A DNA stretch of 64,000 nt from NCBI GenBank assembly GCA_053919585.1, contig CM132819.1; one strand, 5' to 3'. Position 1 is the first letter of the stretch, and each line of letters opens with the position of its first letter. A model generated the notes under the pieces. It did no database searches. It had not been told where the DNA came from and saw nothing but the letters and a program-made list of their open reading frames with translations. This stretch comes from Euprymna scolopes. Lineage: Eukaryota. This document shows, piece after piece, positions 9,701-58,971 of this stretch. The position numbers were made by a program, and so were the translations under genes.

Positions 9701-11099
9701 GTAATAAGCAAAGAAGAAAAATTAACGGCCATGCTTCCTTTCATTCAATATTTTCCTTCTGTATTTAAACTTAGCTATTCTCGGTAAACCTTCACAACTG
9801 AAACGAAATACTGTTAAAAACATTTTTTTCCTATTCTGTTTAATTTTGTTTTTGCTTATTACTACCCACTACTGATATTGACATATGCCGGATAAATGGT
9901 AAAGTACATGCGGTTAAATTTTTCTTCAAAGAAACAGGGATTGAAAACATGCATTTAAAGTGCGTTTATATTGACAATTTAGACGAATAGAAATGGGTAA
10001 AAAATATAAGGTCATTTTAAATGCAACAAGCAAGAATTGTTTAGGTTTTTATTTGGGGGTTGTGCTGTATTTTCTAAAAAAAAATCTCAAAGAATAAAAT
10101 ATCCTTTTGTTTAGAATATTCACGCTTTCACGCACACATAAGGCATGCACACTCCAAATGAAGAGAATGATTCAGTTTTATATTTTTCCTTCTTATTCCT
10201 GGACCATTAATCATCCTTTTTTTTTAGATTTAAATCTATGGATAACCAGGCACAAAGAATAACAAAAATGAAAATTTCTGGGGGTTATCTTTTTTCCTGT
10301 TTTTGTTGTAAGAACAATTATACAAATTGACTTGAAGAATCACAATGTCTCAGCTTCTTTCTTTCTCTCTTACAGACTCTTTTACCGAATTCTACACAGT
10401 TATACTACCTTATAGTTCCTTTTTCTTTTATGTATTCTAATGAAAGGAGAATATTCGTTCTTACTTTTTTTTAATGTTTATTAGCATTTAGGTAGGTTGG
10501 TGAAAGGGGCAAGGTGTGAAATTTGAGGAAAGATAATGGTTGAAAACCAGATATGACAACAGACACAGTTTAATTATATTTTTTCTTTTCTTTTGCATAG
10601 CAACACTTTTTTTTTGGGGGGGGGGTATTCTTGCTTAGTTTCATAGTGAAGTAAGCACAATAATCAGTGGTGATTTTTATGAAGGTAATAAAACCCCGCT
10701 CTAAGATAAAAATACAAAATATAACACAGAAAATATCAGTCTTTATATAAAGTTTCTTTTAAATTCCCCACTTTCTAGATATTAAACGTTTTTTGTTAAT
10801 TCGATTAATAAAAAAAAAATGAGAAAATTATTTTTGTTGTGGGGGTTATTTTCTTTCTGTTTTAATGTTTTAATGGTAGATGAATATTCCACTGATATGT
10901 CCTTACTTATTTCTGCTCTCAAGATAAAAATAAAAACAAAATAAAACAAAGAGAGCAGCGACTATGTAAAAAAATAATTAGACAACGCCAATTATTAAAG
11001 GAAACGAAATAAAGGTGTTTTAGATATATTTTCCTTACTTCTGTTAGCATTAATTTCATTTCCAGCAATTGACATGAAATCAATTAAATTTGAGAAAAA

Positions 11100-40000: not shown

Positions 40001-40858
40001 AAATTCCCCTAGAAGTTGAGAAAGAAAAAACAATTGATGCGAATAATAGACATGATATAAGTTTTTTTTTTTTTTTACTTATATGTAGAACCTCAGTTTT
40101 TGAAAATAATTCGTTCTGAAAAATTAAAAAAAACAAAAACATTTTTCCAGTAAAAACAATTTTAAATGGATTAATTATGCATTTAATGGGTTTATATAAA
40201 AAATTATTAAAGATCAGTATACATTTTTTCAATACTAATCATTATGTACGACCACGTTATATCAAAAATATTCTCTGAACTGCTTATGTATTAAAAGTAT
40301 TTTACTGAATTTTAATGCACAATTTGTAATATATTTTTTTTTATTTTAGTAGGTAGTTAAAATATAGTTTTTTAGAAAAAAAATTGGACAAACAAAAATC
40401 CAGATTTGGAATAAAAAACTTGGGAGTGGAAACTCCAAACAGATCTGTTTACATTCCATTAATCATTATGGTTTAGTTGTCAGCGTGATTTAGAAATCAA
40501 GACGTTGTTAGAAAACCAACTCTTTTTTTCTTCAAAATCCAAATAGTCCCAGTTCATAGATGTTCACTACCTACGATCCGACTGTATATGTAAATATTAA
40601 GTATTTTTATTTTTAATTCAACAATTTGGACAATTTTTTAAATGTATTTCTCAATATCTAATTGATATGAAGTTTTTCGTTGCACACTGCAAAGTAAATC
40701 TATAATATACCAACCTCCACCAAGGACTGATTCTATGGTGATGTGAGATGAATCTATTTCTCTGGTGAATTCCCTGACTGCTTGGTTAGGGTCTTCGTAT
40801 GTATGAGGATCGATGTATGATCTAATAGAGCCTGGTGGTTGAAACAATGGTACAGTCA
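13643..40858 (-). CDS. Eph: Eph receptor tyrosine kinase, partial (juxtamembrane + kinase + SAM + PDZ-binding tail); 8 exons joined, about 404 aa in window
   Basis: Exons join in one frame with GT-AG introns. Motifs: [76 protein letters not shown] domain, terminal SEGFLV*. Confidence 0.97.
14261..15149 (-). mobile_element. Non-autonomous Helitron-like element with about six internal 140-160 bp tandem repeats
   Basis: On the minus strand it starts A|TCTATATAAAGG and ends with a degenerate GC hairpin and CTAG|T. Unit ...tttcaaatgtttagaccaaaa...tttggtagagaccgc...ggtcaa recurs near 14340, 14500, 14650, 14790, 14930 and 15070. Confidence 0.75.
15398..15540 (-). CDS. Eph: Eph exon: [24 protein letters not shown]...LRKMAKPR, 143 nt, phase 0-2
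   Basis: Acceptor ctttgtag, donor AG|gtttgt. Encodes the end of the kinase C-lobe. Confidence 0.95.
16077..16271 (-). CDS. Eph: Eph exon: [12 protein letters not shown]...YRLPPPM, 195 nt
   Basis: Acceptor ttttccag, donor gtaagg. Lies within ORF 16044..16304. Confidence 0.97.
16396..16509 (-). CDS. Eph: Eph exon: catalytic and activation loop [38 protein letters not shown], 114 nt
   Basis: Acceptor ttctag, donor gtaagc. Contains the HRD aspartate, DFG and the activation-loop Tyr. Confidence 0.97.
17190..17288 (-). CDS. Eph: Eph exon: [33 protein letters not shown], 99 nt, phase 0-0
   Basis: Acceptor ttttgtag, donor gtaagt. Translated manually; not in the ORF track. Confidence 0.96.
17636..18032 (-). 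mobile_element. Non-autonomous Helitron-like element
   Basis: Plus strand actagcagggcttcccggaattgcccgg gives a 3' hairpin + CTAG on minus. The 5' end (ccttttatat...) is degenerate. Confidence 0.6.
18901..19168. repeat. Interspersed SINE-like repeat, copy 1
   Basis: Colinear with 34682-34941 (ctatttaacccatagttgggac...ggtactaccactc..ggtcaga.tggacctg.gagcaat.gcaattaaagggtggctccaca...atatccaggac). Confidence 0.85.
19457..19518 (-). CDS. Eph: Eph exon: hinge ([21 protein letters not shown]), 62 nt, phase 1-0
   Basis: Acceptor tttacag, donor gtaaga. Follows a 20.3-kb intron. Confidence 0.96.
20405..20512 (-). mobile_element. Second 5S-derived SINE head or 5S pseudogene
   Basis: Reverse complement ggttctccttagatcactgaacttaagcaatgttgaatctaaccagtaccagatgggtga. 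Shares tctaaccagtaccagat with the 31.3-kb copy. Confidence 0.7.
23209..23292. repeat. Fold-back/MITE-like repeat family, paired copy
   Basis: tagattcgatattctgtttcggttataaac ... gtttcataactgaaacgaaatatcgaatcta. Single arms recur near 9790, 37525, 37665, 45580, 45715 and 46515. Confidence 0.7.
25950..26200 (-). pseudogene. Possible mariner transposase fossil (HTH/linker region)
   Basis: [13 protein letters not shown]...PLLNR resembles mariner HL..LG.V.K...PFL.RI; weak. Confidence 0.25.
31303..31655 (+). mobile_element. 5S rRNA-derived SINE (SINE3-like): degenerate 5S head (31303-31418), body and short ggat tail
   Basis: tacggcacaatcacgttgacacaccggttctcaccagatcaccgaagttaagcaacgtcg follows the eukaryotic 5S rRNA consensus. 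There is no oligo-T terminator, and about 230 nt of body follows. Confidence 0.8.
33906..33982. mobile_element. Tiny Tc1/mariner-type MITE (about 77 bp)
   Basis: 27-bp perfect inverted repeat agggtgtttcaaaagtcttgggaacat / atgttcccaagacttttgaaacaccct, inside a TA microsatellite. Confidence 0.75.
34084..34194 (+). repeat. Tandem duplication, 2 x about 56 bp
   Basis: aaaatggaaatccagcaaattatattttt..attgaaatttgaggctctcatat occurs twice. Confidence 0.9.
34519..34566. repeat. 48-bp palindrome with one mismatch
   Basis: cctgcatatagtttatattactat|atagtaatataaactacatgcagg. Confidence 0.9.
34682..34941. repeat. Interspersed SINE-like repeat, copy 2
   Basis: Direct-orientation homologue of 18901-19168. 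More decayed pieces occur near 32.7 kb and 54.3-55.0 kb. Confidence 0.85.
37762..37925 (+). mobile_element. Degenerate tRNA-derived SINE
   Basis: ggcggtggttcagtggttaac A-box-like head with a GC-richer body; no complete cloverleaf. Confidence 0.45.
38737..38943 (+). repeat. 207-bp near-identical duplicate of 49502-49708
   Basis: Direct comparison shows only a few substitutions and no gaps. The ORF track shows the same peptide twice. Confidence 0.95.
38946..39120. mobile_element. MITE with about 39-bp imperfect terminal inverted repeats
   Basis: ttataactagggctaggacaacagcatattcttttcatt / aatgaaaagaatatgctgttgtcatagccctacttataa. Confidence 0.7.
39823..40008 (-). CDS. Eph: Eph exon: kinase N-lobe ([11 protein letters not shown]...LEGVVTK), 186 nt, phase 1-1
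   Basis: Acceptor cttctag, donor gtaggt. Contains the VAIK lysine. Confidence 0.97.
40715..40858 (-). CDS. Eph: Eph exon: juxtamembrane segment to Gly-loop ([24 protein letters not shown]...VLGG), 144 nt, phase 1-1
   Basis: Acceptor tttccag, donor G|gttggt. Carries both conserved juxtamembrane autoinhibitory tyrosines. Confidence 0.95.
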
Positions 40859-42292: not shown

Positions 42293-42304
42293 TCTCGGGT
42301 TTTG
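42293..42304 (-). CDS. Eph: Candidate 12-nt microexon, phase 1-1 (xKPE)
   Basis: Branch point CCTAAC at 42349-42354 with no AG before gtcttcag|CAAAACCCGAGA|gtaaac. Confidence 0.55.
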
Positions 42305-42976
42305 CTGAAGACATAAGACACGAAATACAAATACACATTTTATTTTTTGTTAGGTTATAAACTTTACCATGAAAAATGGATACAATTTTGGTAAGAAAAC
42401 TGATATTTCACATCAAAAAAATTTATTTTTGTAATATATATTTTTTTTAATTTCACTGTAGCTGAATTCAGAAAATATGTCTTTTTTGCAAATGGTTATT
42501 TCAAAATTTTCGTTTCACAAACCTTTTATTGTTTCTACACTTTTTGCAACAGATATTTCTTGGAATTTTTATCCAATGAATTGTTGTATAAAATACTGCT
42601 ACAATGATATTGATATTCTCAGTTATTTATGAATTAGCATGCGATATATATATATATAACTAATGCATTAAAAATGGTGCTGATCCACATATGTATATAC
42701 ACGTTTATTCAAGCGATTTATTCTGATAAAATGTATTTTGTAATGTCATCATTTTATTAGATAATACCAGAATTTATGTCCTAATTTTAATTCTCTGGGA
42801 TTTAATAGTGAGAATGATTACGAATTATATATTAGTAATATTTTCTTAGTCTTGTTTAATATATATATATATATATATATATTAGTCTTGTTCCCAAATT
42901 TATGCATGGATAGCATTGTATCTGACGAAACGTTATTTGATAATGATTGGCTAAATTTTTCTTCTTCCAATATTTA

Positions 42977-43059
<83 letters not shown>

Positions 43060-44418
43060 GAGAGAGAGGAGACAGATTAAAATTTATTAGGTGTAGATTG
43101 CTTAAAAACTTTAAAAGAAACATTCAAGGCAAGTTGGAGTTAGAAAATTATTATCCTGCAGCAACTCGAAATATTCTCTCTGCTTAAGTCCAAATGAAAG
43201 AACATCGAAAAAAAAAAAAAAGAAAAAAAATGGTTAACAAATTTCAAAAATTAAAATTTTGCTCTTGATTAAAAATGATCTGAATATCGTGCTGAGTCTG
43301 TAAAAGAGTTCCTAGTGGAATCAGTTAAAAAACACTTTGTAGAATCCCACAAAGATTTACCAATGACTAGTGTTTCTCGTTATCCTCAACAACAATCAAA
43401 AGTTCCTTAGCTTGTTAAAAAAGAAAGGAAGTGTAAATTGTGAGATGAGATATGATCTATAAATATTATTTAGCTTCATTATACTGTCACATTTATTTTA
43501 GAGAATTTACATTTGAATAGAACTTATGGGCTGGCCTTAGAGATTAGCATGTATATGTCTTTATAAACCGTATCCATAAATGAAGTGTTTGTGCTGTAAA
43601 GTAGATTTTGGTTTATTATACTATATTAATAAATTATTATTTATTTGTAAGTTTTTAGTGTCTATCTATTATTATATGTTTTTAAGTATAAAGTTAGAAA
43701 TACTTGAAAATGTAATCGAGAGACTAGTCATGAGTTCTGGAACTAATTAACAAAGTTAGGTTGCGCTGTATTTTCTTATCCATTAATCTAAGGTGAAATA
43801 ATTATTTATAAAAAATATCAAACCAATGTCAGTACAAATATTGTATCATGTTTTTAATCACATGAGTTAATTAGTAACAAAACATAAATATATATGCATT
43901 TTTAAATAACATGAACACAGTTTTAAATCAAAACCTTTCACTGGTTTACATAAATAATTGTTTTAAGACGAGCATTCTTTTAATTGTGTGATGAATTCAA
44001 ATGTCAAAAACATTTGCTCTATCACGTCTACTTTTTATTTCACATTTTCTAGTTTCACTAACATGCTTCTTTCTTTCTTTTTTTTTTAAATAACCCAGCT
44101 AACAGATAAAGCATGCCAGTCATGGAATGATGAATAAACATTTATTTTTTGTAATTCAACCATATTTCACACAAATAATCTCCAATCTTTGCATAATTTG
44201 TCCACTAAGTTATCATCATTAATGTCCAACAGTTTTTATTTTATATATTATTTAATTGGAATTCATTATTAAGATGAGTATTATTTATTAATTTGTTTAT
44301 TGCGGACTATTATCCATGAAAGCCAGAGGAATAGCTGGCCGAAACCTCGTGAAACAACTAAGAAAGATGAGGATAATAGTCCGCAATAAATAAATAAAGT
44401 CTTTATTTTATTAAACTA

Positions 44419-44908
44419 CTAGCAAGCCGTCCGGCGTTGCCCGGTCGTAAAATACGCATAAATATTATATTTTAATTTACAGAAACTGAGACAAGGGCAT
44501 GTGAATATGATGTTTTTCTAAACAGTTCACTCATTGTAAGTAAAAAAACTCAAGCTGAGATCGAACCAAAACCTAAAGATAATGAGTGAAGTACGATAAC
44601 CATTAGATTATATAGACACGATTTTAAGTGTTTTCAAACCTACTTATTCTTACCATAAGGAAACTCATGTTTCGCGACCGGACATGTGCAGTCGTAAAAC
44701 AGTTAACAAACTGATAAAAATCTAATGACCCACTCCGAGTAATATTTTTTTAATTTTTAACCCTTAGCTGCATTTATTTTCAGATGAAAACAGATTAAGA
44801 CTTTTTCCACATGTTTGATTATCCTATATACTAAATATCAAGTCTCTAGACCAGAAATCCGTTGAGTATATAGGTTGAGAAATGCTCTCACATTCTCTCT
44901 TTTATAGA
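44419..44908 (-). mobile_element. Non-autonomous Helitron-like element
   Basis: Termini actagcaagccgtccggcgttgcccgg ... ctcttttatagat. Shares the aagtctctagacc-type subterminal unit with 14261-15149. Confidence 0.75.
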
Positions 44909-45077
44909 TAAATAATTCAGACACTCTCCTTCGTTTGAAGTTACGGTTAGTGTAAGGAAAGATTCATTTTTGTTTTAATGGCCCTCTCTAATGCAGAAAT
45001 AGACTTAAATTATTTATTAAGCAATTGCTGGTATTATGGTTTTCTGAGTATAAAGCCCCATTCAGAATGAAACTAAC

Positions 45078-45102
45078 TGAGGAATCTATCACCAAATTGT
45101 CC
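45078..45102 (-). CDS. Eph: Candidate 25-nt microexon, phase 0-1 (GQFGDRFL)
   Basis: ttttatacag|GGACAATTTGGTGATAGATTCCTCA|gttagt, with an upstream TGC. Confidence 0.45.
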
Positions 45103-45162
45103 CTGTATAAAATTGAACAGCATTAAAACAACGATTGTCGAACCTTTTTGACTGAAACCTAC

Positions 45163-45181
45163 TAGACTCTTCAGGCATAGC
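45163..45181 (-). CDS. Eph: Candidate 19-nt microexon, phase 0-1 (AMPEES)
   Basis: ctccag|GCTATGCCTGAAGAGTCTA|gtaggt; the pyrimidine tract is weak. Confidence 0.4.
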
Positions 45182-45437
45182 CTGGAGTTCAATTGTACTA
45201 AACATGGTTGGATTGCAGAAAAAGCTGTCAATTTTATTAACAATTTCATTGATGGCATTTTTAGTAAACCATTACAATACTTTAATGTCATACAATATTT
45301 AGAAAAAAAATTCATATTACATATAAACAAATATAAACAACTAAAAACTACTATAATTCCTATAATACAATATATATACACATGGTACTGCAGACACGTT
45401 CTTTTTGTCAAGACATTTAATTTATAGAATTACTTAC

Positions 45438-45469
45438 ATATACACGTGGAAGTTTGTTTAAAGGAAAAA
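45438..45469 (-). CDS. Eph: Candidate 32-nt exon, phase 1-0 (xFPLNKLPRVY)
   Basis: CTAAC upstream, weak acceptor tttttaag|, consensus donor |gtaagt. Confidence 0.3.
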
Positions 45470-46317
45470 CTTAAAAAGTAATAAGCAAATGGCAGACTAG
45501 TTAGAAAAAGAGCAATTAACACAAAAACATGCTTATTTGTAATCTATATTTCATATAATTCTGAAACCTTTACTATGAAAAAGTTTCATAACTGAAACGA
45601 AATAGCGAATCAATGTGTTAATTTTTCTTGTTCTAGCGTGTTTTCTTTTTTGTTACAAATTACAGCCTGCATGTATAAATTCGATGTTGTTTTAATTAAG
45701 AAACCATATATGAGAAAGTTTCATAATTTAAACAAGATAGCTAATCAATAATATAATCTTAGTTTTTCATGTTCTAACTAGTCTGTTCTTTGCTTATTTT
45801 CTTATTTTGGATGAACTAACATACATACGTACATAATTATGCAGTTAAGTAAGGAATAAGAATGCATGTGGTATCTGAACTCAACACATTCAAATTAACT
45901 TATGTAACACTTATGTATATACTTGTATCAATTTTTTGTGTGAACCAGTGTACTAATATCACGAGCACATAGTCAACATTTCTAGTCAGCTAAAAGACTT
46001 TCTGAAATATATGAAAACATTAACAACATCATATTCAAAAACAACAACGAAAAGAAAGTTAAATTGTCAAAACAAAGCCTGGAATTAAACATGAAAAGAA
46101 TGAAAAAGAATTCGGCGAATTTCGATTTATAAAATATATTTAGATATATTTTATTAAATGCTTTTGACTTACGGTTTTATAGCAGATAAAAGAAATTAAG
46201 ACCAAAAACAACACAAAAAGCAGAGTGATATAAGTTTTGAATACTTATGGAGTGGATTTTAAAATAATTTTTTGCCGTTTTATTTTGAAATTTATCACCA
46301 TTTTCCCCCTTTTATAT

Positions 46318-46358
<41 letters not shown>

Positions 46359-48149
46359 GATAGAATACAAATTTTTGTACATACTTACATACAAATGTTT
46401 AATGTATCCACAGTAATGAAGTATTAAGCAAAGAACTAACTAATATGAAAAAATTAACAATCCTACATTCTTTCAATCAATATTTAATTTTCGTTTTTCG
46501 TGGTATTCTTGATAAAGTTTAATAATTGAAACAAAATAGCAAGTTAAATAAAAGTAGGATTCAGTATTAAATTTCCATGTTAGTTTGTACTTTGCATAAT
46601 TACATTTTTACCTATCTATACTGAGTTTCTGTTCAATAGATATTCCTTTAAAAACTTTTATATATAACCTATATGGGGGGAAATAGTCGTTTTAAAAGTA
46701 TGTTTATAAAGTTGTACATAAAATAATTATAGTTTCCAAACTAAAAGTTCCCTGGCATGTATTTTCATGTTTTATTTATTTTATTGACATTTATTAAGTA
46801 TTCCCATCTCTTCTGCCCGAATTTTAATTCAGAAATAAAAGTGGGGACGTCTAATGGAACTAAACAATATCTATACATCATTAATAATTTGTATCTTAAA
46901 AAGATAAAATTTTCAGTTAAAAGCCCTTAAATACCCTCAGATACTATCGTATTTCAAGATAAAAAAATGTCTTACGAGTTTTAAAATAGATAACTCAACT
47001 ACTGAAGCTATATATTTTGGCTTAAAAATGTGCAGAAGACGGTTTACAAAATTCTGTAATGGAAATTTCGCTTTTAAAAATGAAGACCAAGCATGAGTTT
47101 GATGGACTTTCTACAGCATCATTTTAAAGAATTCAACTTCACAAAACTTCATTGCGTACTCGTTTTCAAGCCTAGAAACAAGTTTATATTACTGAAGATG
47201 TGTAGCCGAACCCTCGTGGTGAGGTTAAGCAACTGACTTCTGGTCTTTTTCGAAACTGTGGCTCGTGATATCTAGTCGGCCGGGAGCTACAGATGACGAT
47301 GAACAGTTGTTTGGTTTCACAACTGATACTACACAGTATTCTTCTAAATAATACCACAAGGTATACCACTTCAAACTCAAGTGAACGTCCCGATTCGTCT
47401 TCAAAAATGCAATTTCCATTTGAGAATTTTGTAAAACCATTTCTGTGTTTATTCCGGAACAGTTGAGATTTAAATGGGATGGGATAATTTCAATTTTTTT
47501 CCTAATTACGATAAAATTAGATTCTATTTTAAATTTTTAATTTTACTTTTTAAATCTCTGAATATTACGCTATGGAGTTTTTCTTTATCTTTGTAATACG
47601 TGCATATATTTTTTGCAAATGTAAAAAATGCACATGATTTTTGGAATAATTTTATTATTTCTAGTTTCAAATCAATAAGTATTTATCATTTTATAATTAC
47701 TATCAACAATCGAAAATTATATTTAATAAAAGAAAACGAAAAATTTAAACGAATCATTTTTGGCATCGGAAAATACACAAAAGGCATCCAATTCTGATTC
47801 CGACACTAAAAAGTCGGATTTTTCTGATTCCCGATTCCAAAAAAATTCCAGACTATGTATGAAAGGATCAGCGAGTGATTATATATATTATTTAGTTCTA
47901 TTAGACTTTTCCATTTGCAATTAAATTTCATGGAATTAAACATAGAACAGAAAGTATGGGCTGGATTGCTATTTTAGAGAGAAAGAAATGCATAGTGAAC
48001 ACAATGCTGAAATAAATCAATTATATAACAATATTTGAAATGTGTGAGTTGTTCTGTCCGTCTGTCAGCAGATGTTGTACTGTGATTGCTGTTGAGAAAA
48101 TAGGTAAAAAGCATGCACTGAAGAAGAAGTGTTCTACATCTGGCAAAAC

Positions 48150-48159
48150 CTAATGGAGT
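48150..48159 (-). CDS. Eph: Candidate 10-nt microexon, phase 0-1 (TPL); donor uncertain
   Basis: GCTAAC at 48253-48258, about 90-nt AG-free pyrimidine-rich zone, gtccag|ACTCCATTAG|gttttg. TGCATG lies about 35 nt downstream. Confidence 0.45.
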
Positions 48160-48359
48160 CTGGACCGAGAAAAAAGAGTGATAGATGACAAAGCATGAAG
48201 GATAGAGAGATAGTGATATATGAAAGATGTCAAAGGATGAGAATAGAAAAATGTTAGCTGGCTAGCCTAAGTTTTGTGTGTGTTTTTTTTTTTAATTTTT
48301 GAAGGGGGTAGATTTTCTGTGGGGCATGGGGGCAGCTGAGTGCACTATAGTAGACTCAC

Positions 48360-48401
48360 GTTTTTCACCCTTCTGGTCAGCCCATATTAAACGTCTTAGG
48401 C
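48360..48401 (-). CDS. Eph: Candidate juxtamembrane cassette exon, 42 nt, phase 1-1 (xLRRLIWADQKGEK)
   Basis: About 30-nt pyrimidine tract, then tgctttttag|, donor |gtgagt. Symmetric and open in phase 1. Confidence 0.7.
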
Positions 48402-49501
48402 CTAAAAAGCAAAATAAAAAAAAGAGAAAAAAAGACATCACTTAGATGGAAGATGACAGCCGAGAGAGAGAGAAACTGAAAACAAAGACATAAAAAATTA
48501 TTTGTTAAAACTATTTTTGAATTTTAAATGAAACCATTTTTTATAAATAATTCTTCTTACTCGAGGACTGGATTATTTATTTTTTATATGGGGATTTTTG
48601 TTTATTTTTAATAGGCAAAAATCTTAATGGAAAAAATAATTTATAAACTATGTACCTGATGTTTTTCGGATAGAGATGTATAAAAATGTTAGTTTTTACA
48701 AATAACTACCTGTATTTACTCGGCGTTGCCTCAAACTCATTTTACTCTAATTATGGCTTTGCTCATTGTTCACTTTTGAATAAAAGAACGTGAAGAAATT
48801 TAAGTCATTAAAAATTAAAAAAAAATATTAAAACAGTTTTCAAGTATCTCAGTTGTTCGAAAATTTTAGAACCCATTTTTCCCATTGTTGGTTCTCTTTA
48901 TTTTCTTGCAAGAAAATATTTACATGTTGGAAAAATTCGATGAATTCCAAGAAACCGAATTTGCAATAAAATTTATTGGAGATCTTACAAAATATTTAAA
49001 TTTAAATCCAATAAATGCTTTCAAGTCTTTTAGTATTTTTATCTTAATTCAATAAATTGAGGCTCAGAACTACAATTATCAAATCAGCAAATATGCACAG
49101 AGAGAGGGCCCTAATTATGTGACAAATGCAGAGAGGAAGAAACTGGTTAAGATTATGTACTTATTCTCTGGAGTGAGAAAAGGGTAAGAAATAAGTGATT
49201 ACTTATTAAAAATTCGTTCACTCGCGTACGAAGTAATCGTGAAATTTTACCTTGCCTCATTTGAGTTGAGTATTTCTCTTTAATAGGATTTCTAAAATGT
49301 TCATTGAAGCAGTATATGTTAATAATTTTTATTTCATTTTATTTTACTAAACAACCAATTAATAATAAAGTGTACATCTGGTAAAAGTGAGAAAAACTAG
49401 ATTACATAATTAATAGAGATTAAAACTACCATAAATTTAAAAGTATATTAGAACTTGACAAATACAGTGCTAAAATATAGCAAGTGTTTTAAATTTTTAG
49501 A

Positions 49502-49708
49502 ATATGAAGTTTTGCAGGAATTTTTATTTTTCAAAAATACCATACATATAAACTTTATTTTATTCACACAAGGTGTTTTAGGTACTTATATTCATTCCGG
49601 TCATGTGTATCCGGATAAAGATTCTGATTTGTCCGAAGCGCATCAATTTATGCAAACAACAACACCTCATAGTTCGCTTCAAATACCCAATTGTTTAAGT
49701 CTAGTTTT
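49502..49708 (+). repeat. 207-bp near-identical duplicate of 38737-38943
   Basis: Direct sequence comparison. Confidence 0.95.
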
Positions 49709-51056
49709 TATGGATTATGTAATTTAACAGAATGATTAAGCCTTAAAAATGGATTATTACCTTGTTAAAAATTTTGCAGAAAAGGATTTAAATTTATGGA
49801 CGTTATGTTTCAGATATTTTTCAGATGAGGATTGATGACTTAGATAATTCGGAATACTATTTCAATCTCGATTATTATATTCAGCATATCGGCTGATGAA
49901 ACCTCCAACCTTTTTCATGTGCATCTTTAGGACATTTTAACCTTCTAATTTAACTTGAAGAATCTTTATGTTGATCCCGAGAAACTATGCAGAATTTGGA
50001 ACTGAGCCTTTTATTGAACAGAGTTAAACACCAGGGTCGATTTTTAATGTGGAGAAAAGGAGGAAAAATTTTAAATTGTCTCAGTCGTGAAGGATATCCC
50101 CTCTACTGCGAGAGAACAAGAAATTCAAGCGCAGCATCAGAAGAACAGATATTACACTTTGATCTTGGCTAGCAGGCCAAGAAATCTCTTATGGTATGTA
50201 ATACCGTGTTAATGTGAAAAATATACAAAGCTGAAAAAAAACCTTGACATTATTGGCATGGCATAATATGTAGAGACACTAAAGAGTTGGGTATGGCTGA
50301 TCATATGAGGGAACCACCCAACTTTGTGGGACGAAGTTAAAATTATAGACAGAATGATTTTGGGGCGTAAAAAAATCCCCTAAATCAGCGCAGGTGCTGG
50401 GCGATAATGACCTCCAAAATAAACCTAGTATAGAATGGATTGCAATGTGGGAAGTAATAGCTCTGAAGAATTAGAACAAGTAAATAAATAATCGTAGAAA
50501 AATAATTCTACACACCGAGACAAAATTGTAACCATGCCAAAATTTATACTAAAATTGTTTGCATGGACGGTATTTAATAGTTAAGAGTATTTGTAACCAA
50601 ATATTTATGATAGCCTTCTGAAGGTTGGAAATTCTTACATCCTTACAAAAGATAATAAAAACTAATAACATAATTTAACATTTATACCCGTTTATAGCAG
50701 ACAGAATGAGGACAATCCGCCTTTGGGAATTAAATAAGGAGTTGAAATATAAATTATATACAATTTCCAAATTTCGGCATAAAGATTCTCCAAATGAGAC
50801 TCAAAATTTCAAAAGTTTGAAAAGCTGCACCTGAAAATGATTAAAGATTTCATCAGTAAAAGCGTTGTAAATATAATAATCGAATTTTTGAATAATAGTC
50901 TGAATAAGCCTCTCAATAAAAGTTGAACTATTTGGATCTGAAAATGATATTTTTGCCTATGAATAAAAAATATTGCGGTAGTCAATTTTTATTTATTTTT
51001 TTTGCAAGTTGGACAGCAACTGACTTTGCTTCGTTCTTGTAGTCGGAGATTGTTAC

Positions 51057-51145
51057 CATTTGATCCCTGCGTGGGGAGGTAATGTCTATGATGCACCCAT
51101 GAGTGGAGGAGAAAACCTTGTGTGGACCACCTGAGAAATGAGCCA
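51057..51145 (-). CDS. Eph: Candidate alternative exon, 89 nt, phase 1-0 (xAHFSGGPHKVFSSTHGCIIDITSPRRDQM), or a terminal exon running to the stop at 50982
   Basis: CACTAAC branch point at 51234-51240, long pyrimidine tract, about 85-nt AG-free zone, aacag| acceptor, gtaaca donor, locally raised GC. Confidence 0.55.
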
Positions 51146-54100
51146 CTGTTATTGTATTCATTCCAACAAGAACCATGGAAGGTAGATTCGAGACAAAGAA
51201 AAAGAGAAAAGAGAAGGAAAAAAGAGAAAAGACGTTAGTGAATGAAATGTGAAACCGTTAGTAAAAAAGCAATTGAAAATAGAAATAATCGGCATTGGCA
51301 AAGCTAACAGACCACAACATCTGAAATCGTTTTGCGATGATATAAAAAATGATTTTTTTTAATGAGAAAAAGAAACTTATTAATGCACCTATTATTCACC
51401 CAGACGGTATTTTTTTTTTTTTTGCCAAAAAAAAAAAAACAGTGAAAAAAAAAATCCTAAAAGAAAAAGTAAAAGTGCACTTTTGCAGCCGGATATGAAC
51501 TTTAAAATATACAGTTTTTCAGAAAAACATTGAAAATATTTTTTTTTGTTAAATAGTCGTTTGATTTACAAATATTATAATTTTTATGATAAGTACTAGC
51601 AAAACAAAAATAAATTTTAGTATATATTCTCCATTTATTTTTTTAGCATTTTTATTCGTGACTTAGAATGAATTTTCTATTTTCTTTTTACTTTAATAGT
51701 AACCGAAATAAATCAGTGTCTACTCTGATATTATATGCATAGATTTTTTTTTAAATGTGCTTATTTTAATTCAGTATTTTGTATGCCTATCTCAAATTTG
51801 CTTTAGAGAGATCAACATTCGTCTTTCTATTTTGACTGTATATCGCCAGCATTCCTTTTTTACTCAGTTAATCTGGAAATATATCTCATTAAATTTGCTT
51901 CCGGTGTACAAGAATAACTATAGTAATAGATCTGAAAGTGAAATTAAAAACTTGCACCCCTTGCCTTAATTTAGGAATTGAAGGTTAAATATCGATAAGC
52001 TCTAAATATTAAAATCAATCGGAAATAAGAACTTAATTTTTAAGATAACAGACCAATATGTGTCCGGCGAAACTGGATTTCGTATGTACATTAGAACAAA
52101 ACTATTGAAATCAAAGAAAACTGACTCGACTATCTATAGCACATAACGAAACGCTTGCCGTTGCTTATTCGCTCCTAGAACTGCAATCCACATCCAATGC
52201 CAGAGACCATGTTTGCAGCCAACTAATATATATATAAAACAGAAATGGGCACTATTTTCTTTCTATTTTCTTTCAATCGATAATATGAAAACATCTGTTA
52301 AATATTTCTAAGAATTTCCTATCACTACTCATTTCATGAGAGCATTGTTTTTGCAAGCATAGAAAAGGTCAAGTACTTTTAGACTTACTAAGAAAATTAA
52401 AATATCGAATCAATATTTTCTTTGTTCTACAGTGTAATAATGTGAACAATGGAAATTTATTTGTTTTATTTTATCTGCAGAAAATAGATATTAATAAGGA
52501 AAATAATTTATAACATTAATATTTTTTAAATACTTGGCAATGTTAATCCAACGTTTCTCTGTGGACCTAGTCGTGTAAAGATGACAAACAGATTTTTAAA
52601 GATTTCAAATATAAAACGCAAGTTTTTTTTCCAAGAACAGAGGAAATAGCCATTATCTGTTTTTATTTAAGAACATTAAGAGTAAATTTGAGATAGTACA
52701 GGCTAATCCCTAAAAATTGTCATCCATGAAATCGTTAAAAATTTCACAATCAAACCTGCAATCAAACCATACTTTGTAGCTATACATTTCATTTTATACT
52801 GGAGTTTTAATCATGCCCAAAAATCTTGGTTTTATTGATATTCAATGATACGCTGGGACACTTTAGTGATCGTTTCATCAGTAGGAAGTGGGATCATGTA
52901 TGCCAAGCAAAGAGCATGTCAAAGTTATTGATGTAATACGAAAGTTCGCTAATTATTCAACAGAAATAAAACCAAGACTGTTGGACATCCATGGTTGAAA
53001 ATTGGTGGACAATTTCGATATATGCTTGCAGAAAGAATAATGTATTTTAGCAACAATTGCATCGATGACATAGTTTGCAGGTTAAGAAGTCCTTGCTATT
53101 GAAACCGGCTTGCTTGTCTGGTGAAGAAAGGGAAACAATTTTAATTTGTCTATTTAAAAGATCTGAAATTAAATATTGGAAAAAGCATAGTTTTTTTTTT
53201 CTTTTTGCATTGCAAACAGAATTGATGAGTTTTGCTGAATGTTTAGGAATTAGGTATCATCCGTTATAGCACATAGTTCATAGCTGAAGATACAGATTAG
53301 AAAATATCTAACTCAAAATAAATATCCTATAAGGAGTGCGAGTACAAATAAGCTCGTTTTAAACAATTGGTTAAAAAGAAAAACAGCATTTTTGTTAATA
53401 GGTTAAAAAGCAATAAATAAAAATCAAATGAAGCAAAAAGGAAATAAAATAGCATTAAATAGGAATTTTGTTAAATTATTAATAATTAGGCATACATAAT
53501 TGTTTTATTGTTACAGCATTTCGAATGTTATCCTTTAAGGCCTCCTTCAGATATCTTGTGTTAACCATCTGAAATGCTCAACTGAAAGCCATGAGATTAG
53601 TACATATTGGCTTACCTCTAGGATTATGGAACATTAAAGTAATATATTTTATTAACCGATGCCCTCCCCTAAATTATACAAAACAAAACAGCGCATCAAT
53701 ATTGCTATAAAGTTAGATATGTATATTTTTTTTATATATTTGTATGGGCCGGATTCATAAACTAGTTAATTGATAATTATGAATTTTCGAACACAGGTAT
53801 TAAGCATAAGAGTCGTAATATATAAAATATTTACGTTACGTTTTATGCACACGAGTTGAAAAAAGGTGAATATAAATACAATATCTCATTTGAAAAGTAT
53901 TTCAGATCATCTTAAGCAAGATTCAATGAATTTTATGTTCACATTTAAAAAAATAAAGACCTTACATTTTAGAGATAATCTAGAATCCAAATAATCTAAT
54001 TCGCTTTGATCAAAATTAGAAATAATGATTCCAGACAAAGCTTAGAATCATTATAACCCGATTTTAATCTTCATAAGGACCGGGGAGAGCATAACAGTGG

Positions 54101-55906
54101 TGTAAAACTTCTGGATTAGGAATGTATTTTCCCCGTCCTGAGACGGGTATTTTTCTAAAATATAAATTTATTTTAGGATTATACTATACTAAATCAATGT
54201 CCTATGCATTGAACACACGTTTCAATTTTAGCCATGACACACCAGGTAACGGATATATTTTAGGCGTGTTTAGTTTATGGCATATTTACCCTAATCGTGC
54301 GATTTAATTTTGAATCCAGTCATTTTGGTAAATATTTTTATGCTTCAAGTTCTTAATATTTGAAAACAATAGATCAATTTGGTTTATGAATAGTTTGTAG
54401 ATAAATTTACTTTGGGAATAGTCTCGAATTAATACATTCTATGTGACCAAGTGATGGGACTTCAGTGTAGACCTAAGAGTCATGATAATCCAAGAGTGAC
54501 TGAACTCTTAAACCACTTTTATAAGGGTCTCATCACTGGACTCCGATTCATGTTATATCCTTTTTGGCTAGGATCAAAGTGTAGTATATGACCAATGACG
54601 CCCATTTTCCTACACTTCCGATTGACCGTGTGCCTAATTTGCTTAAAATTAGGAAACTATTTTTTTTAATTTTACAAATAAATAATTCAAAGTGTAGTAA
54701 CTGTTCTGACATTGAACTTCTGTTCTCAATGAATGAAGGAAAATATTCTAGACTGAATCTATTTTTATTTTTTCACAATCTTGAGTTCCGTCTGTAGGAA
54801 GACGAGTTTTATCCACATTATGAACCAAACGTGTATCTAACACTTCCTTTGTGTGGGGGCAAGGAAATAGAAGCCTTTAGATGTAACTCTAGCAGATAAG
54901 ACCACTACAACTCTGAATGCCCTTAGAGCAGTAGAACTGAAGGCCTATTTTACACCTCATCAGATACAGATCTGTGTCAGATGTAGGTAGGGGCTTAATA
55001 GAGAGAACTTATGTATTTGATAGAGTTGGCAAATAGGGTAGGTGGAAGAAAATAAGTAAAAATGACTGAGAAGAATTTCTGAGACATTTTAACTATTTTT
55101 CGATGGTGATGTGGGAGGGGGAACCTTGACCAACGCTTTGATTCAGGTTTAGTTTCCAGAAGAATATATTTTAGGAATTTAAGTTGAAGATAAAGCGTAC
55201 TAGTGGGGCCCATGGAAATTCAAAAGCTGTATTCTTCATCTCTTGTATATTGCTATAGTTCCTAAAAATATTTTTATATTTTTCCAAATGGAAACACACT
55301 TATCTTAGTAGTCTGGTTAATCTAGTTCAAAAATATGCCTAATTATGAGAGTCTATCACAAAAATCCTTGACGTTTGGTGTGAAGGCAAACCTCACAATA
55401 TTTTTGTACTATTTTTAGACAGAATGCATATAAAATTTTATTCAAGCTTAAGATCTAAGAAATTTCTTAGTTCAAGTTCCATATTCGATAAAAAAAAAAA
55501 AAAGCGATAAAAAGGCGACATGAGATGAAATTTAAAAATATTTCTTCTTCGATGATCGGGCGGTAGTATCTTTTTGAAAAGGAGATGAAAGGTGATGGCG
55601 TACCTACGCACATGAAATTATTTTAATGTATTATTATATAGGTAAAAGAAATTCTAAAACCTTGGATGCAAATCTGTAGTAACTGTGAACAGGAAGAAAT
55701 ATAGGAGTTTGTAAAACTATGGTAATTCTTTTATCTCAAAAATAAATGTCGTTAATTGTATTTTTTTTTCTTTTAAAGGGGTTGAGCAGGATCAAAGAGT
55801 AATCCAGCGAAAGGGTGAGTGTGTGTGAGAGAGAGAGAGAGAGACAAAAAAAAATTAAGAGGTGAAGGCGGTTAGATAACTGCGGTAATTTTATCAGGGT
55901 ACTTAC

Positions 55907-55948
55907 TTCCCCCGTTTATTTGTGTTTCCATCGGCGGACACTGAATAA
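55907..55948 (-). CDS. Eph: Candidate juxtamembrane cassette exon, 42 nt, phase 1-1 (xIQCPPMETQINGG)
   Basis: Long T/C tract ending ccccag|, donor |gtaagt. Length divisible by 3 and open in the phase required by exon 40715-40858. Confidence 0.75.
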
Positions 55949-58139
55949 CTGGGGGGAGAAAAAAAAACAGAAATAATAATAAAGGAACAACACGAAGACC
56001 TGAGAAAGGAACGTAGCAATTCAAAGATGAATGCGGAAGCGAGCAGGCATGCGGACAGCCAAGACAAAAAAAAAATGGAGCCGTAAAGAAACAAATAAAC
56101 AAACAAAAAGATGAAGAGGAGAAAAGAAATCGCGAGCAGCGTTTGCCATACGCAGGCATGCATATACGCAACGAAAGAACAAATTCTAGATTCCAAAAAG
56201 TGGAATTACTTTATTAAATTGGAACCAAATTAAATATGGCATGGAACCAACTGAAGACGAATGTTCTAAATTCCACTTGGAAATTTGAATAGAATGTTGA
56301 AACATTTAAGAGGATTTCTGCATGTTATTTAATAATAGATTATCAATGACACCTACGGTCACAACCACTATTGTTCCATTTGTGTTTCATTCAAAAATTC
56401 ATAAACTTAATTGTTTTTATGGGTTTTTTTTTTACATAACTATAAATATTGAGTTTTTATTTCTACATGTTTCATGTGAATTATATGCATAAAGGTTGCT
56501 ATTATTTTGCTATTTGGTTTACATAAGTCTTTGCGGTGTGTAGGAACACAATTAAAAAGAGAATTACTCTTTCTCTAACTGCTCACAAAGGCATTCACAA
56601 CTATTGGAGAGTAGTTGAACAATGAGAACGCAAAAGACTTTCATAGGTAGGTACAAGATGAGTAACATGTTCAGTTAACTACAAATTATCGCTAATTAGA
56701 GTGGATTAGAATTTTAAACATAACTGTGCCAAAATTGAGGAATATTTTATCATGTATTTTGCATTTTTATAATCATTTTTTTATAAAAGCCTTAGATAAA
56801 GAAATTTTTTTTTACTTGGCCTTTGTACAAAAGATTATAGATGATGAATCAGAGGAAATCGTCCGTAAAGTCTGGTATAATATGTAAAAAAAAATGAATG
56901 AATAAATAAATCAATTGGAATTTACTTTCTTTTCAATGCAGTAAGATGTGACGAGGTTAGCTGGAGGATGGGGGAGGTCAACTCCTCCCGCTGGGGTAAC
57001 TCTGGTCAAATGCAAAATAGCTGATAACAGACCTGTGAGCATTACGCATTAGCAGCACTTTAGACGATCAGCAATAACTCACTCAGGTTGATCTCCAAAG
57101 ACTTAACTACTTAATTCTAAGAATGGTATCGCGTTTTAAGTTACTCACTAGATTACCGGATACCAAGGTTGGTGTGACAATTGGAGAATATTTAAATATC
57201 CTATGTGTTTCGATTTCATGAACATCTTGTTTCTGAATATATATTGTTATTCATTCAATTAAAAATGTTTTGACTGTCATATTTCTTCTAAAACCATCTC
57301 CACATTTTATTTGAGATTCGTTTTACATGCTTGCATGTGTAAAATTGCTTTTAGAAATTGACTTCCAAGCTAACCTACCTCTGACCAGACCTTTTTTTAT
57401 CCCACTTTCTCTCAATTCTATCTTTATCTCCTCGTCTTCTTCTGCCTTCTTCTCTAGGCTGATCCTACTACCTAAATTGTTCCACATCTAATAATCCAAG
57501 AACTATCATTTTTTTCAATATGGCCATTGAAATATCATCTACACATATCTTCAGATTTAATATTCCGTGCTCATCAAACTTAAGCCCCTCTTTAAGATTC
57601 ACATTACACATTGTGCCATTCTTATACTTCCTCCCAATGCAATGTGTATCGTCAATAATCACTGTCTAGCTTTCACTTCTATACATCGCATTGTGTACAC
57701 ATGCCTATTATATTTTTCTCTCCATCGACAGTGGCAATGCACTGCTGATTAGTAATGACAAATGTTTCATGAACTCATTTCATTCACTCCTAATTAATGT
57801 TGTCACACTAGCACTTGTTCCATTTTTCTTCCGATGACATCATAAAGATAGAACCATTTCTGAACCTCAATAACGTCGACATTCATATATATTTTTCTGC
57901 ACATTCGAGTTCTCATTCGTCCCACTGTCTTACACTCTTTGCAGATAAACTGGTAATTTCTCAAACTACTTCATCCTAGAATATATTGCTTTTGCTTTAG
58001 TTGCATGGAATTAAGTGTGATATTATGGAGTTCAAGGTCGGATACACAAGCAAACATAGCACGCGAAAAATTGACCAATGTGCTGGTACGATCCGTGTTG
58101 AAGAAACCTGATGTAGATGGCTTTGTTTTCTTCAGATAA

Positions 58140-58290
58140 TTTTGTATTATTCTGTCCTCATCTCCGGCATTATTCTCGCAACGTTTTGGGCTGAAGTATC
58201 TAAATTTATTTAGGTTGCTCTTGTCAAACTCGGGAATCTGTACGGAATTTGTAACAGAACTCATTTAATTCAGGGAGGTAGTTTTTTCAC
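58140..58290 (-). mobile_element. Decayed Penelope-like pseudo-LTR fragment
   Basis: Homologous to 49870-50040, 59521-59650, 44316-44398, 30088-30170, 53500-53560 and 61620-61715. The family consensus resembles ctgaaga-stem-cgaaacg. Confidence 0.55.
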
Positions 58291-58957
58291 ATTCCCTCAG
58301 CCACAAGTAAAGTAAAAATCTAAAATATTTTGTACTTGTGTTCTTAGTATAGCTCGTACTGAAGATTTAACCGAAAATCCTCAGAAGACTTTCACTTAAA
58401 ACTGATTAATTTAGTGCTTATATCCAATGGGTCACGAGTGCTAGAAGAATCATACCAAGGATGAGAACAGTAGTCCGAATAATACAAATTATCCATCTTA
58501 GAAAAGGTACAAAACTTAAAATCAATATCAAGCAGGAAGCTGTGCTTGGAATTATATATCTTGCTTTAACCTCGGTTAGATGTGATATTGGAAACATAAA
58601 AACAACAAAATAAGCTTGATCCAAGCATTTGAGAAAGAAATTTAAACACGATTAAGCTTGTAAACAATATTAATGTGGCTTGAAAAACATAGTGAAAATG
58701 TGTATAGATGAGCGAGTGAGCGAATTATTGAAAGCAGATATGCAAGCGAGGGTTGAAGCAGCAGCCATGTCAATTTCAAACAAAAAAAAATAAAAATAAA
58801 AATGGGACACAAGATAACAAAGGTCAAGGGTTTTGTGCTGGAGAATAAAAAGGGAGACCCAATGCAGATCTGTGCAAATGGAATGTGCAGATTGCAATCG
58901 AAGAAATAACCCACACTTTACACACACCCTGTTCCCCCATCGCCGCCGTAAACTTAC

Positions 58958-58971
58958 ATGTCGTCCACATT
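58958..58971 (-). CDS. Eph: Candidate 14-nt microexon (AATGTGGACGACAT), reading phase unresolved
   Basis: cttcgttctgtcctccag| acceptor and |gtaagt donor, embedded in a GC-enriched non-repetitive block. Confidence 0.5.

What the first reader, a model, noticed from the sequence alone, without database searches (positions are those of the whole stretch)
42293..58971. Array of candidate micro/cassette exons that could combinatorially diversify the Eph juxtamembrane segment
Seen: at least nine short AG...GT-bounded segments on the Eph strand upstream of the phase-1 juxtamembrane exon. Three are symmetric and open in phase 1 (42, 42, 12 nt), three read phase 1-0 (14, 89, 32 nt) and three read phase 0-1 (10, 19, 25 nt). 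Three have CTAAC branch points followed by AG-free zones of about 45-90 nt. Known: the Eph juxtamembrane region controls kinase autoinhibition and adaptor docking, and neural microexons are typically regulated by Srrm-family and Rbfox proteins. Inference: a modular splice code could give one invertebrate Eph gene many signalling isoforms. AT-rich introns also produce pseudo-exons, so some candidates will probably be false.
Basis: partly seen in the sequence, partly recalled or inferred. Interest (0 to 1): 0.85.

Follow-up and report, generated by a model that had tools for sequence, protein, structure and literature searches.

The report
Two real Eph juxtamembrane cassette exons
Of nine proposed mini-exons in a large intron of a cephalopod's only Eph receptor gene, two 42-base exons are real and combine to give four receptor isoforms, while the other seven look like chance.

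Summary
The window holds the 3' half of the genome's only Eph receptor gene, on the minus strand of a 5.9-Gb, about 30% GC, cephalopod-like genome. All nine AG...GT-bounded segments exist with the stated lengths and phases.

Two candidates are genuine cassette exons:
- B = 55948-55907, encoding VIQCPPMETQINGG.
- C = 48401-48360, encoding GLRRLIWADQKGEK.

Same-species mRNA contigs (100% identical in most exons) join the post-transmembrane exon, which lies outside the window, to the juxtamembrane exon 40858-40715 in three ways: directly, through C, and through B+C. B alone is seen in a related species. Octopus RefSeq isoforms show all four forms, and a Doryteuthis pealeii cDNA carries C.

B, C and the juxtamembrane exon are the only collinear blocks conserved with the Octopus bimaculoides intron. 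B has recognisable counterparts in molluscs, a brachiopod and arthropods.

The other seven candidates, including every frame-shifting one, have no support from transcripts, laid contigs or conservation. The "array of nine" is therefore over-called, but combinatorial diversification of the juxtamembrane linker is real. It is already annotated in relatives.

The parts
55907..55948 (-). Cassette exon B: 42 nt, phase 1 in and out, encodes (V)IQCPPMETQINGG. Acceptor ccccccag|, donor |gtaagt.
   Evidence: The exact junction string post-TM exon|B|C|JM is present in same-species mRNA contig L013. B alone is in L014 and L015 from a related species. Proteins P0355 and P0360 carry it. Octopus orthologue at L021:9984-10025 has 39/42 nt identical and conserved AG/GT. 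Homologous inserts occur at the same junction in molluscs, a brachiopod and arthropods.
48360..48401 (-). Cassette exon C: 42 nt, phase 1 in and out, encodes (G)LRRLIWADQKGEK. Acceptor ctttttag|, donor |gtgagt.
   Evidence: Exact junctions are in same-species contigs L016 (C only) and L013 (B+C). Contigs of three runs lie exactly on 48360-48401 or 48360-48403. D. pealeii GenBank protein UZQ18783.1 carries GLRRLIWADRKGEK, and Octopus and Argonauta isoforms carry GLSRLIWADRMGEK. Octopus exon at L021:18305-18346 has 34/42 nt identical.
40715..40858 (-). Constitutive juxtamembrane exon: 144 nt, phase 1, encodes [47 protein letters not shown]. It is the common acceptor for all four isoforms.
   Evidence: Pfam EphA2_TM match at E 3e-10, sequence read, mRNA-to-genome junctions.
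39823..40008 (-). First kinase-domain exon (GEFGDVCKG...LEGVVTK).
   Evidence: tblastn and mRNA alignment.
48402..48497 (-). Intronic block just upstream of exon C that aligns with Octopus. Candidate splicing-regulatory region.
   Evidence: Block 48497-48354 aligns to L021:18207-18352 at 67% over 149 nt, E 9e-11. It is one of only three collinear conserved blocks in the intron.
55949..55985 (-). Polypyrimidine and acceptor flank of exon B, conserved with Octopus.
   Evidence: Block 55985-55894 aligns to L021:9946-10038 at 84% over 93 nt, E 2e-18.
58958..58971 (-). Candidate 14-nt segment (phase 1 to 0). Unsupported, probably a pseudo-exon.
   Evidence: Absent from all mRNA junctions and protein isoforms. 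Not conserved with Octopus. On its own it would shift the frame.
51057..51145 (-). Candidate 89-nt segment (phase 1 to 0). Unsupported.
   Evidence: Weak acceptor with 6/18 pyrimidines, at the 73rd percentile of intronic AGs. Absent from transcripts. Not conserved.
48150..48159 (-). Candidate 10-nt segment (phase 0 to 1). Unsupported.
   Evidence: C is spliced directly to the JM exon in L013 and L016. Weak donor gttttg. Not conserved.
45438..45469 (-). Candidate 32-nt segment (phase 1 to 0). Unsupported.
   Evidence: No contig piece was laid there although exon C was laid in three runs. Absent from transcripts. Not conserved.
45163..45181 (-). Candidate 19-nt segment (phase 0 to 1). Unsupported.
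   Evidence: At 19 nt it is too short for read laying to place, so one search has no power here.
45078..45102 (-). Candidate 25-nt segment (phase 0 to 1). Unsupported.
   Evidence: Weak donor gttagt, at the 68th percentile of intronic GTs..
42293..42304 (-). Candidate 12-nt symmetric segment. Unsupported.
   Evidence: Acceptor at the 74th percentile. Absent from transcripts. Not conserved. Outside the stretch on which reads were laid.

Best explanation
The stretch is most of a 26.4-kb intron of the single Eph receptor gene. This intron separates the post-transmembrane exon (window-equivalent 67313-67246, outside the window) from the juxtamembrane exon 40858-40715.

It contains exactly two demonstrable cassette exons, B (55948-55907) and C (48401-48360). 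Each is 42 nt and starts and ends in phase 1, so each can be included or skipped independently without changing the frame. Only the junction codon changes: Val when both are skipped; Val...Met around B; Gly...Leu around C; Ser at the B-C joint.

The result is four isoforms. Their tether between the membrane and the first regulatory tyrosine ([10 protein letters not shown]) is 38, 52, 52 or 66 residues.

Shown: the exons, their junctions, the four combinations, and conservation from octopus to decapodiform cephalopods (B far beyond).

Inferred: the inserts sit in a flexible linker N-terminal to the autoinhibitory juxtamembrane segment. They probably tune kinase release or partner docking through tether length and added sequence. 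B is proline-rich with a cysteine. C is basic and amphipathic.

The other seven candidates are most likely chance AG...GT pseudo-exons of an AT-rich intron.
For: Gene context:
- The genome has a single Ephrin_lbd match.
- The gene model comes from tblastn and from mRNA-to-genome alignment with GT-AG introns.

Transcripts:
- Same-species mRNA contigs are 100% identical in most exons.
- L017-L020 skip both cassettes, L016 has C only, and L013 has B+C.
- L014 and L015, from a species about 89% identical, have B only.
- Each contig contains exactly one of four 80-164-nt junction strings.
- 23 cephalopod proteins in two clusters show only these four patterns. They include the D. pealeii cDNA UZQ18783.1 and Octopus and Argonauta isoforms.
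- Exon C is laid exactly by contigs of three runs.
- Five runs on record as RNA (polyA, oligo-dT or random-primed) hold only 0.22-0.33 of the words of a 116-nt stretch centred on B, about the exon's share. Genome-sized runs hold 0.78-1.00.

Conservation:
- Against the Octopus bimaculoides locus, the only collinear conserved blocks are B, C and the JM exon.
- B is 39/42 nt identical, against 118/144 for the JM exon.

Splice sites:
- A weight matrix from the 13 constitutive sites puts B and C in the top 5 of 5,646 AG...GT pairs in the intron.

Deep homology of B:
- B-like inserts sit at the same junction in chiton, bivalves, gastropods, Lingula, insects, crustaceans and chelicerates.
Against: - B in this exact species rests on one assembled contig (L013) plus indirect word shares.
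- Assembled contigs drop rare variants, and exons shorter than about 31 nt cannot be placed by read laying. Rare, neuron-specific inclusion of a 10-25-nt exon is therefore not excluded.
- The one raw-read RNA run (X23) had zero depth even on exon C, so it says nothing.
- The Octopus locus has N runs covering about 3.9 kb of the B-to-JM interval.
- No functional data exist. The AlphaFold model was poor (mean pLDDT 49), so "disordered linker" is only weakly supported.
- Tissue specificity is unknown.
Confidence: 0.85

Rival explanations
1. One reading: an array of nine or more micro and cassette exons, including frame-coupled pairs (14/89/32 nt with 10/19/25 nt) and a mutually exclusive 19/25-nt pair, that generates many isoforms.
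For: All nine segments exist with AG/GT bounds and open frames. Two of the nine are real. Annotated arthropod isoforms carry very short inserts at this same junction, such as GKK in ticks and GLVVTYM in insects, so very short exons here are not implausible in principle.
Against: No transcript or protein isoform shows any insert other than B and C. C is joined directly to the JM exon, although five of the seven lie between them. None is conserved with Octopus. 488 AG...GT pairs in the intron have both splice-site scores at least as high as the lowest values among the seven. No GKK-like or GL[VIL][VIL]-like phase-1 segment exists in the intron.
Confidence: 0.02
2. Beyond B and C, one or a few of the seven candidates, or another unlisted microexon, are used at low level in specific neurons. 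Assemblies and annotation pipelines would miss this.
For: Contigs drop rare variants, and read laying cannot place exons shorter than about 31 nt. The 14-nt and 32-nt candidates rank in the top 25 pairs by splice-site score.
Against: The 14-nt and 32-nt segments shift the frame and need a 0-to-1 partner. All three candidate partners have weak donors or weak acceptors. There is no conservation with Octopus. No variant appears among 23 cephalopod isoforms.
Confidence: 0.1
3. B and C are not true exons but assembly chimeras, retained-intron fragments or annotation artefacts.
For: Each same-species form with a cassette is seen in a single Logan contig (L013, L016).
Against: The junctions fall exactly at AG/GT with both flanking introns removed. 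Independent samples, species and pipelines agree: Logan contigs, a GenBank cDNA and RefSeq/ENA models. Length, phase and splice sites are conserved in Octopus. B-like inserts occur across protostomes.
Confidence: 0.02

Closest known systems
Annotated cephalopod Eph isoforms: Octopus bimaculoides, O. sinensis and O. vulgaris X1-X3, Argonauta hians X2, and Doryteuthis pealeii Eph cDNA UZQ18783.1
   Same: They carry orthologous 14-residue inserts at the same junction: METQTNGG (end of B) and GLSRLIWADRMGEK or GLRRLIWADRKGEK (C). The same four combinations occur. In O. bimaculoides the exons have the same 42-nt length, phase and splice sites.
   Different: This genome has Q where D. pealeii has R in C. 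Intron lengths differ: B-C is 7.5 kb here and 8.3 kb in Octopus, and C-JM is 7.5 kb against 10.4 kb. I found no paper that describes these isoforms.
Alternative inserts at the same junction in other protostome Eph genes (predicted and RefSeq isoforms)
   Same: The inserts lie between ...CD(T)L(E/Q)Y..GE and (V/L/M)T(V/M/T)PLF. Examples are molluscan VVHCPPLEPHMNGG, Lingula VQYPPPVIVDTHMNGS, insect VHCNLDNPPIVTTHTNG, crustacean VHGVLENPPIVQTHTTGS and chelicerate VVPALEHPPIVQTAR. Isoforms with and without the insert exist.
   Different: Arthropods add short upstream inserts (GKK, GLVVTYM, GLIVTFSKL) and gastropods add VQADLAR. Neither has a counterpart in this intron. C appears only in the cephalopod sequences retrieved.
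Vertebrate Eph juxtamembrane splice variants, such as the neuronal chicken EphB2/Cek5+ variant with a 16-residue juxtamembrane insertion (from memory, not verified here)
   Same: A short, frame-preserving insert in the juxtamembrane region of an Eph receptor produced by alternative splicing.
   Different: Homology of the inserts was not tested. I could not retrieve the primary papers. Vertebrates spread diversity over 14 or more Eph genes, whereas this genome has one.
Srrm4/Rbfox-regulated neural microexons
   Same: Short, symmetric, highly conserved alternative exons in a neuronal signalling gene. B is more conserved at the nucleotide level than its constitutive neighbours.
   Different: At 42 nt they exceed the usual limit of 27 nt. 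Neural specificity was not tested. TGCATG density near the exons is hardly above background.

Membership tests
Eph receptor tyrosine kinase gene | Ephrin-binding domain, cysteine-rich domain, two FN3 domains, transmembrane segment, juxtamembrane YxxPxxYEDP motif, tyrosine kinase domain and SAM domain. | tested here: met
   The products of the same-species mRNA contigs hit PF01404, PF25599, PF00041 (twice), PF14575, PF07714 and PF00536. [10 protein letters not shown] is in exon 40858-40715. The protein ends in EGFLV.
Alternatively spliced cassette exon | Both the inclusion and the skipping form are observed as spliced RNA with exact AG/GT boundaries. | tested here: met
   Junction strings for skip, C and B+C are present in same-species contigs, and B alone in a related species.
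Alternatively spliced cassette exon | Frame-preserving: length a multiple of three, open in the gene's phase. | tested here: met
   B and C are each 42 nt, phase 1 to 1, and all four concatenations are open.
Alternatively spliced cassette exon | Orthologous exon conserved in related species. | tested here: met
   Octopus bimaculoides L021:9984-10025 and 18305-18346, with 39/42 and 34/42 nt identical.
Combinatorial (independent) cassette use | All on/off combinations occur. | tested here: met
   Skip, B, C and B+C are all seen in decapodiform contigs and in Octopus isoforms. In this exact species B alone was not seen.
Mutually exclusive exons | The two exons are never included together. | tested here: not met
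   B and C occur together in L013/P0360 and in Octopus X1/X2. The proposed 19/25-nt pair has no transcript support at all.
Neural microexon (Srrm4/eMIC-dependent) | Length of 27 nt or less. | tested here: not met
   The real exons are 42 nt. The candidates of 27 nt or less (10, 12, 14, 19, 25 nt) are unsupported.
Neural microexon (Srrm4/eMIC-dependent) | Neural-specific inclusion and dependence on Srrm or Rbfox proteins. | not testable with these tools
   Run metadata are coded and the one raw RNA run had no depth. One TGCATG lies at -214 of B and one about 240 nt downstream of C, against a background of 0.19 per kb.

The most novel reading that the evidence does not exclude
The junction between the post-transmembrane exon and the juxtamembrane exon of Eph may be an ancient, protostome-wide splicing hotspot. 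Cassette B would have been kept for more than 500 million years, and lineages would have added their own partners: C in coleoid cephalopods, GKK or GLVVTYM inserts in arthropods, VQADLAR in gastropods. In this reading the inserts functionally tune forward signalling of a single-copy Eph receptor through tether length, membrane association or partner docking. That would do by splicing part of what vertebrates do with many Eph paralogues. A few further rare microexons among the seven unsupported candidates could add to the set.
Probability: 0.3. Interest if true: 0.6.

Novelty: new member of a known kind. Interest (0 to 1): 0.35.

Why it matters
Eph receptors guide axons and set tissue boundaries, and their juxtamembrane segment controls kinase autoinhibition. 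Cephalopods build very large brains with a single Eph gene. Two independently used cassettes give four receptor forms in the tether that links the membrane to the regulatory tyrosines. One cassette is conserved across protostomes, which argues for selected function and against splicing noise. This offers a simple test system of four natural isoforms from one gene for how linker length and sequence affect Eph signalling. The case also shows that picking exons by AG...GT bounds and open frame alone, in AT-rich introns, gave seven unsupported calls out of nine.

Tried and rejected
- **P0151 (Logan, ERR3431203).** It has the JM exon 100% identical but continues as TYKLHMAGSINL... That tail is not in the 104 kb examined and no DNA was available. 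It is probably unspliced DNA of a relative. Left unexplained.
- **The look-up of encoding contigs for P0368.** Not on record. P0362 was used instead.
- **Raw-read RNA run X23.** Zero depth on the positive-control exon C, so it gives no test of the other candidates.
- **Depth peak at 44250-44860.** This is a high-copy repeat, not an exon.
- **60-nt query for runs holding B.** Too short for the index. A 116-nt query worked.
- **Kinase-domain cassette known from D. pealeii and Octopus.** Searched in intron 39822-19519 by tblastn; no convincing match.
- **Arthropod-like GKK or GL[VIL][VIL] cassette in the intron.** None among 491 symmetric phase-1-open segments.
- **AlphaFold2 model of the transmembrane-to-kinase region with B+C.** Poor model, mean pLDDT 49. 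The linker has pLDDT below 40 and no secondary structure. Used only as a weak hint of disorder.
- **Literature.** No paper in the library describes these invertebrate cassettes. The chicken Cek5+ precedent could not be verified from held text.
- **CTAAC branch points as a predictor.** Rejected. The two real exons lack CTAAC, and its background is 1.06 per kb.


Full report
**Context**

The window is G000:C37:21824001-21888000 of a 5.9-Gb genome with about 30% GC. An Eph receptor gene runs on the minus strand. Its juxtamembrane (JM) exon is 40858-40715. It is 144 nt, enters and leaves in phase 1, and encodes ...[18 protein letters not shown].... The first kinase exon is 40008-39823, and further exons follow down to a stop at about 13646. 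The genome has only one Ephrin_lbd match, 74 kb upstream of the window, so this is a single-copy Eph gene.

**The observation**

| # | Coordinates | Length | Phase in to out |
|---|---|---|---|
| 1 | 58971-58958 | 14 nt | 1 to 0 |
| 2 | 55948-55907 | 42 nt | 1 to 1 |
| 3 | 51145-51057 | 89 nt | 1 to 0 |
| 4 | 48401-48360 | 42 nt | 1 to 1 |
| 5 | 48159-48150 | 10 nt | 0 to 1 |
| 6 | 45469-45438 | 32 nt | 1 to 0 |
| 7 | 45181-45163 | 19 nt | 0 to 1 |
| 8 | 45102-45078 | 25 nt | 0 to 1 |
| 9 | 42304-42293 | 12 nt | 1 to 1 |

All have AG before, GT after and open frames in the stated phases. CTAAC lies upstream of four of them.

As a class they are not remarkable.
- The interval holds 3,592 AG...GT-bounded segments of 3-100 nt, and 1,525 are open in the three phase classes.
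- Markov shuffles and the antisense strand give similar numbers.
- The whole intron holds 491 symmetric, phase-1-open segments of 6-45 nt.

**Gene model upstream**

A phmmer search with the JM exon and word-index searches returned mollusc and other protostome Eph proteins. I fetched 40 kb beyond the window and ran tblastn. This placed the FN3, transmembrane (68591-68480) and post-transmembrane (67313-67246) exons outside the window, in window-equivalent coordinates. The boundaries were refined with mRNA contigs and the GT-AG rule. The intron in question is therefore 67245-40859, or 26.4 kb.

**Two candidates are real**

The same tblastn matched 55946-55896 to inserts in a freshwater mussel and a snail Eph protein, exactly between the post-TM and JM exons. 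Cluster members of the two cephalopod Eph clusters show only four patterns in this region:

| Form | Sequence across the junction |
|---|---|
| Skip both | QGE-V-TVPLF |
| B only | QGE-VIQCPPMETQINGG-M-TVPLF |
| C only | QGE-GLRRLIWAD(Q/R)KGEK-L-TVPLF |
| B+C | QGE-VIQCPPMETQINGG-S-LRRLIWADQKGEK-L-TVPLF |

The members include a Doryteuthis pealeii GenBank protein, Octopus and Argonauta isoforms, and eight Logan transcript products.

I fetched eight of the underlying mRNA contigs. Six of them are 100% identical to the window in most exons, so they come from the same species. String tests with 40-nt flanks gave these results:
- L017-L020 join 67246 directly to 40858.
- L016 goes through 48401-48360 (C).
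- L013 goes through 55948-55907 and then 48401-48360 (B+C).
- L014 and L015, from a species about 89% identical, carry B alone.

No contig has any other insert.

**Reads**

I laid four runs on 42450-48449, with C as positive control and four other candidates inside.
- Contigs of three runs lie exactly on C: 48360-48401 in two and 48360-48403 in the third.
- Two of these are 72-nt unitigs made of the 42-nt exon plus 30 unaligned bases, which is consistent with a branch between alternative forms. The third is a 3,041-nt contig.
- Nothing lies on the other four candidates. Exons under about 31 nt cannot be placed this way, so this adds little for the 10-, 19- and 25-nt segments.
- The only raw RNA run had no depth even on C and is uninformative.
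- A strong depth peak at 44250-44860 comes from a dispersed inverted-repeat element with thousands of candidate copies.

For B, five runs on record as RNA (polyA, oligo-dT or random-primed) hold 0.22-0.33 of the words of a 116-nt stretch centred on the exon. That is roughly the exon's share. Genome-sized runs from several organism labels hold 0.78-1.00.

**Conservation**

The Octopus bimaculoides locus L021 carries B at 9984-10025, C at 18305-18346 and the JM exon from 28765. All have AG/GT, and B and C are 42 nt.

A sensitive blastn of the whole intron against L021 gives only three collinear blocks:
- B with its flanks (84% over 93 nt).
- C with about 96 nt of upstream intron (67% over 149 nt).
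- The JM exon.

None of the seven other candidates lies in a conserved block. N runs in L021 hide about 3.9 kb of the B-to-JM interval.

Nucleotide identity to Octopus is 39/42 for B and 34/42 for C, against 118/144 and 146/186 for the constitutive neighbours.

B-like inserts occur at the same junction in a chiton, bivalves, gastropods, Lingula, insects, crustaceans, chelicerates and a millipede. Isoforms with and without the insert are annotated. C was seen only in cephalopods. Arthropods and gastropods have other short partners (GKK, GLVVTYM, VQADLAR), which have no counterpart here.

**Splice sites**

A weight matrix was built from the 13 constitutive donors and acceptors of this gene. It is a small sample and only indicative. 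It ranks B and C among the top five of 5,646 AG...GT pairs in the intron. For comparison, 488 pairs have both scores at least as high as the lowest values among the seven unsupported candidates, and 13 pairs reach their medians.

Every 0-to-1 partner that the frame-shifting candidates would need has a weak donor or a weak acceptor. The two real exons lack CTAAC.

**How it works**

Shown: two independent 42-nt phase-1 cassettes yield four in-frame isoforms. These lengthen the segment between the membrane and the first JM tyrosine from 38 to 52 or 66 residues.

Inferred from general knowledge of Eph autoinhibition by the unphosphorylated JM segment: the inserts lie N-terminal to that segment, in a linker that a poor AlphaFold model leaves unstructured.
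- B is proline-rich with a cysteine.
- C is basic with a moderate helical hydrophobic moment (0.50, net charge +2).

The likely effects are on tether length, membrane association or docking. None of this was tested.

**Comparison and novelty**

The same exons are already present in Octopus RefSeq and ENA isoforms and in a squid cDNA. For this genome they are therefore new members of a known kind. I found no paper describing them or the protostome-wide conservation of B. The vertebrate precedent, the chicken EphB2 JM insert, is from memory only.

**Verdict**

Noticed in passing
window 44250-44860 (core 44259-44398): A dispersed repeat with inverted-repeat structure. The first look found 3,124 candidate copies genome-wide. 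RNA and contig depth pile up here from other copies, with opposite-strand joints at 44288/44395. It could be mistaken for an expressed exon.
   Followed up: partly
intron 39822-19519 of the window; L021:32818-32856 in Octopus: Other cephalopods and molluscs have a further alternative insert right after ...LEGVVTK in the kinase N-lobe. Examples are D. pealeii NESPIDSPSANLD, Octopus MKFFSIWPYQSEC, oyster NEDAEVIICFAG and mussel NFVFAD. tblastn found no convincing counterpart in this window.
   Followed up: partly
window 48402-48497 (minus strand): About 96 nt of intron immediately upstream of exon C align with Octopus (67% identity). This is a candidate splicing-regulatory element. TGC lies about 9 nt upstream of the acceptor here but not in Octopus.
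   Followed up: no
exon C, window 48360-48401, codon CAG: This genome encodes Q in GLRRLIWADQKGEK, where D. pealeii and other decapodiform transcripts have R. Q-to-R is the kind of change that A-to-I editing makes. The contigs laid here show no other letter at this exon, so it looks like a species difference.
   Followed up: partly
protein P0151 (Logan contig of ERR3431203): The JM exon is 100% identical at the protein level but is followed by TYKLHMAGSINLATEMEIFAEFRSAIFIL and a stop. This sequence is absent from the 104 kb examined. It is either a relative's intron read-through or an alternative terminal exon located elsewhere.
   Followed up: partly
related proteins, not in the window: Annotated arthropod Eph isoforms carry very short inserts at the same junction. 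Ticks and horseshoe crabs have GKK (apparently 9 nt), and insects and crustaceans have GLVVTYM or GLIVTFSKL. Gastropods have VQADLAR. The junction looks like a recurrent splicing hotspot across protostomes.
   Followed up: partly
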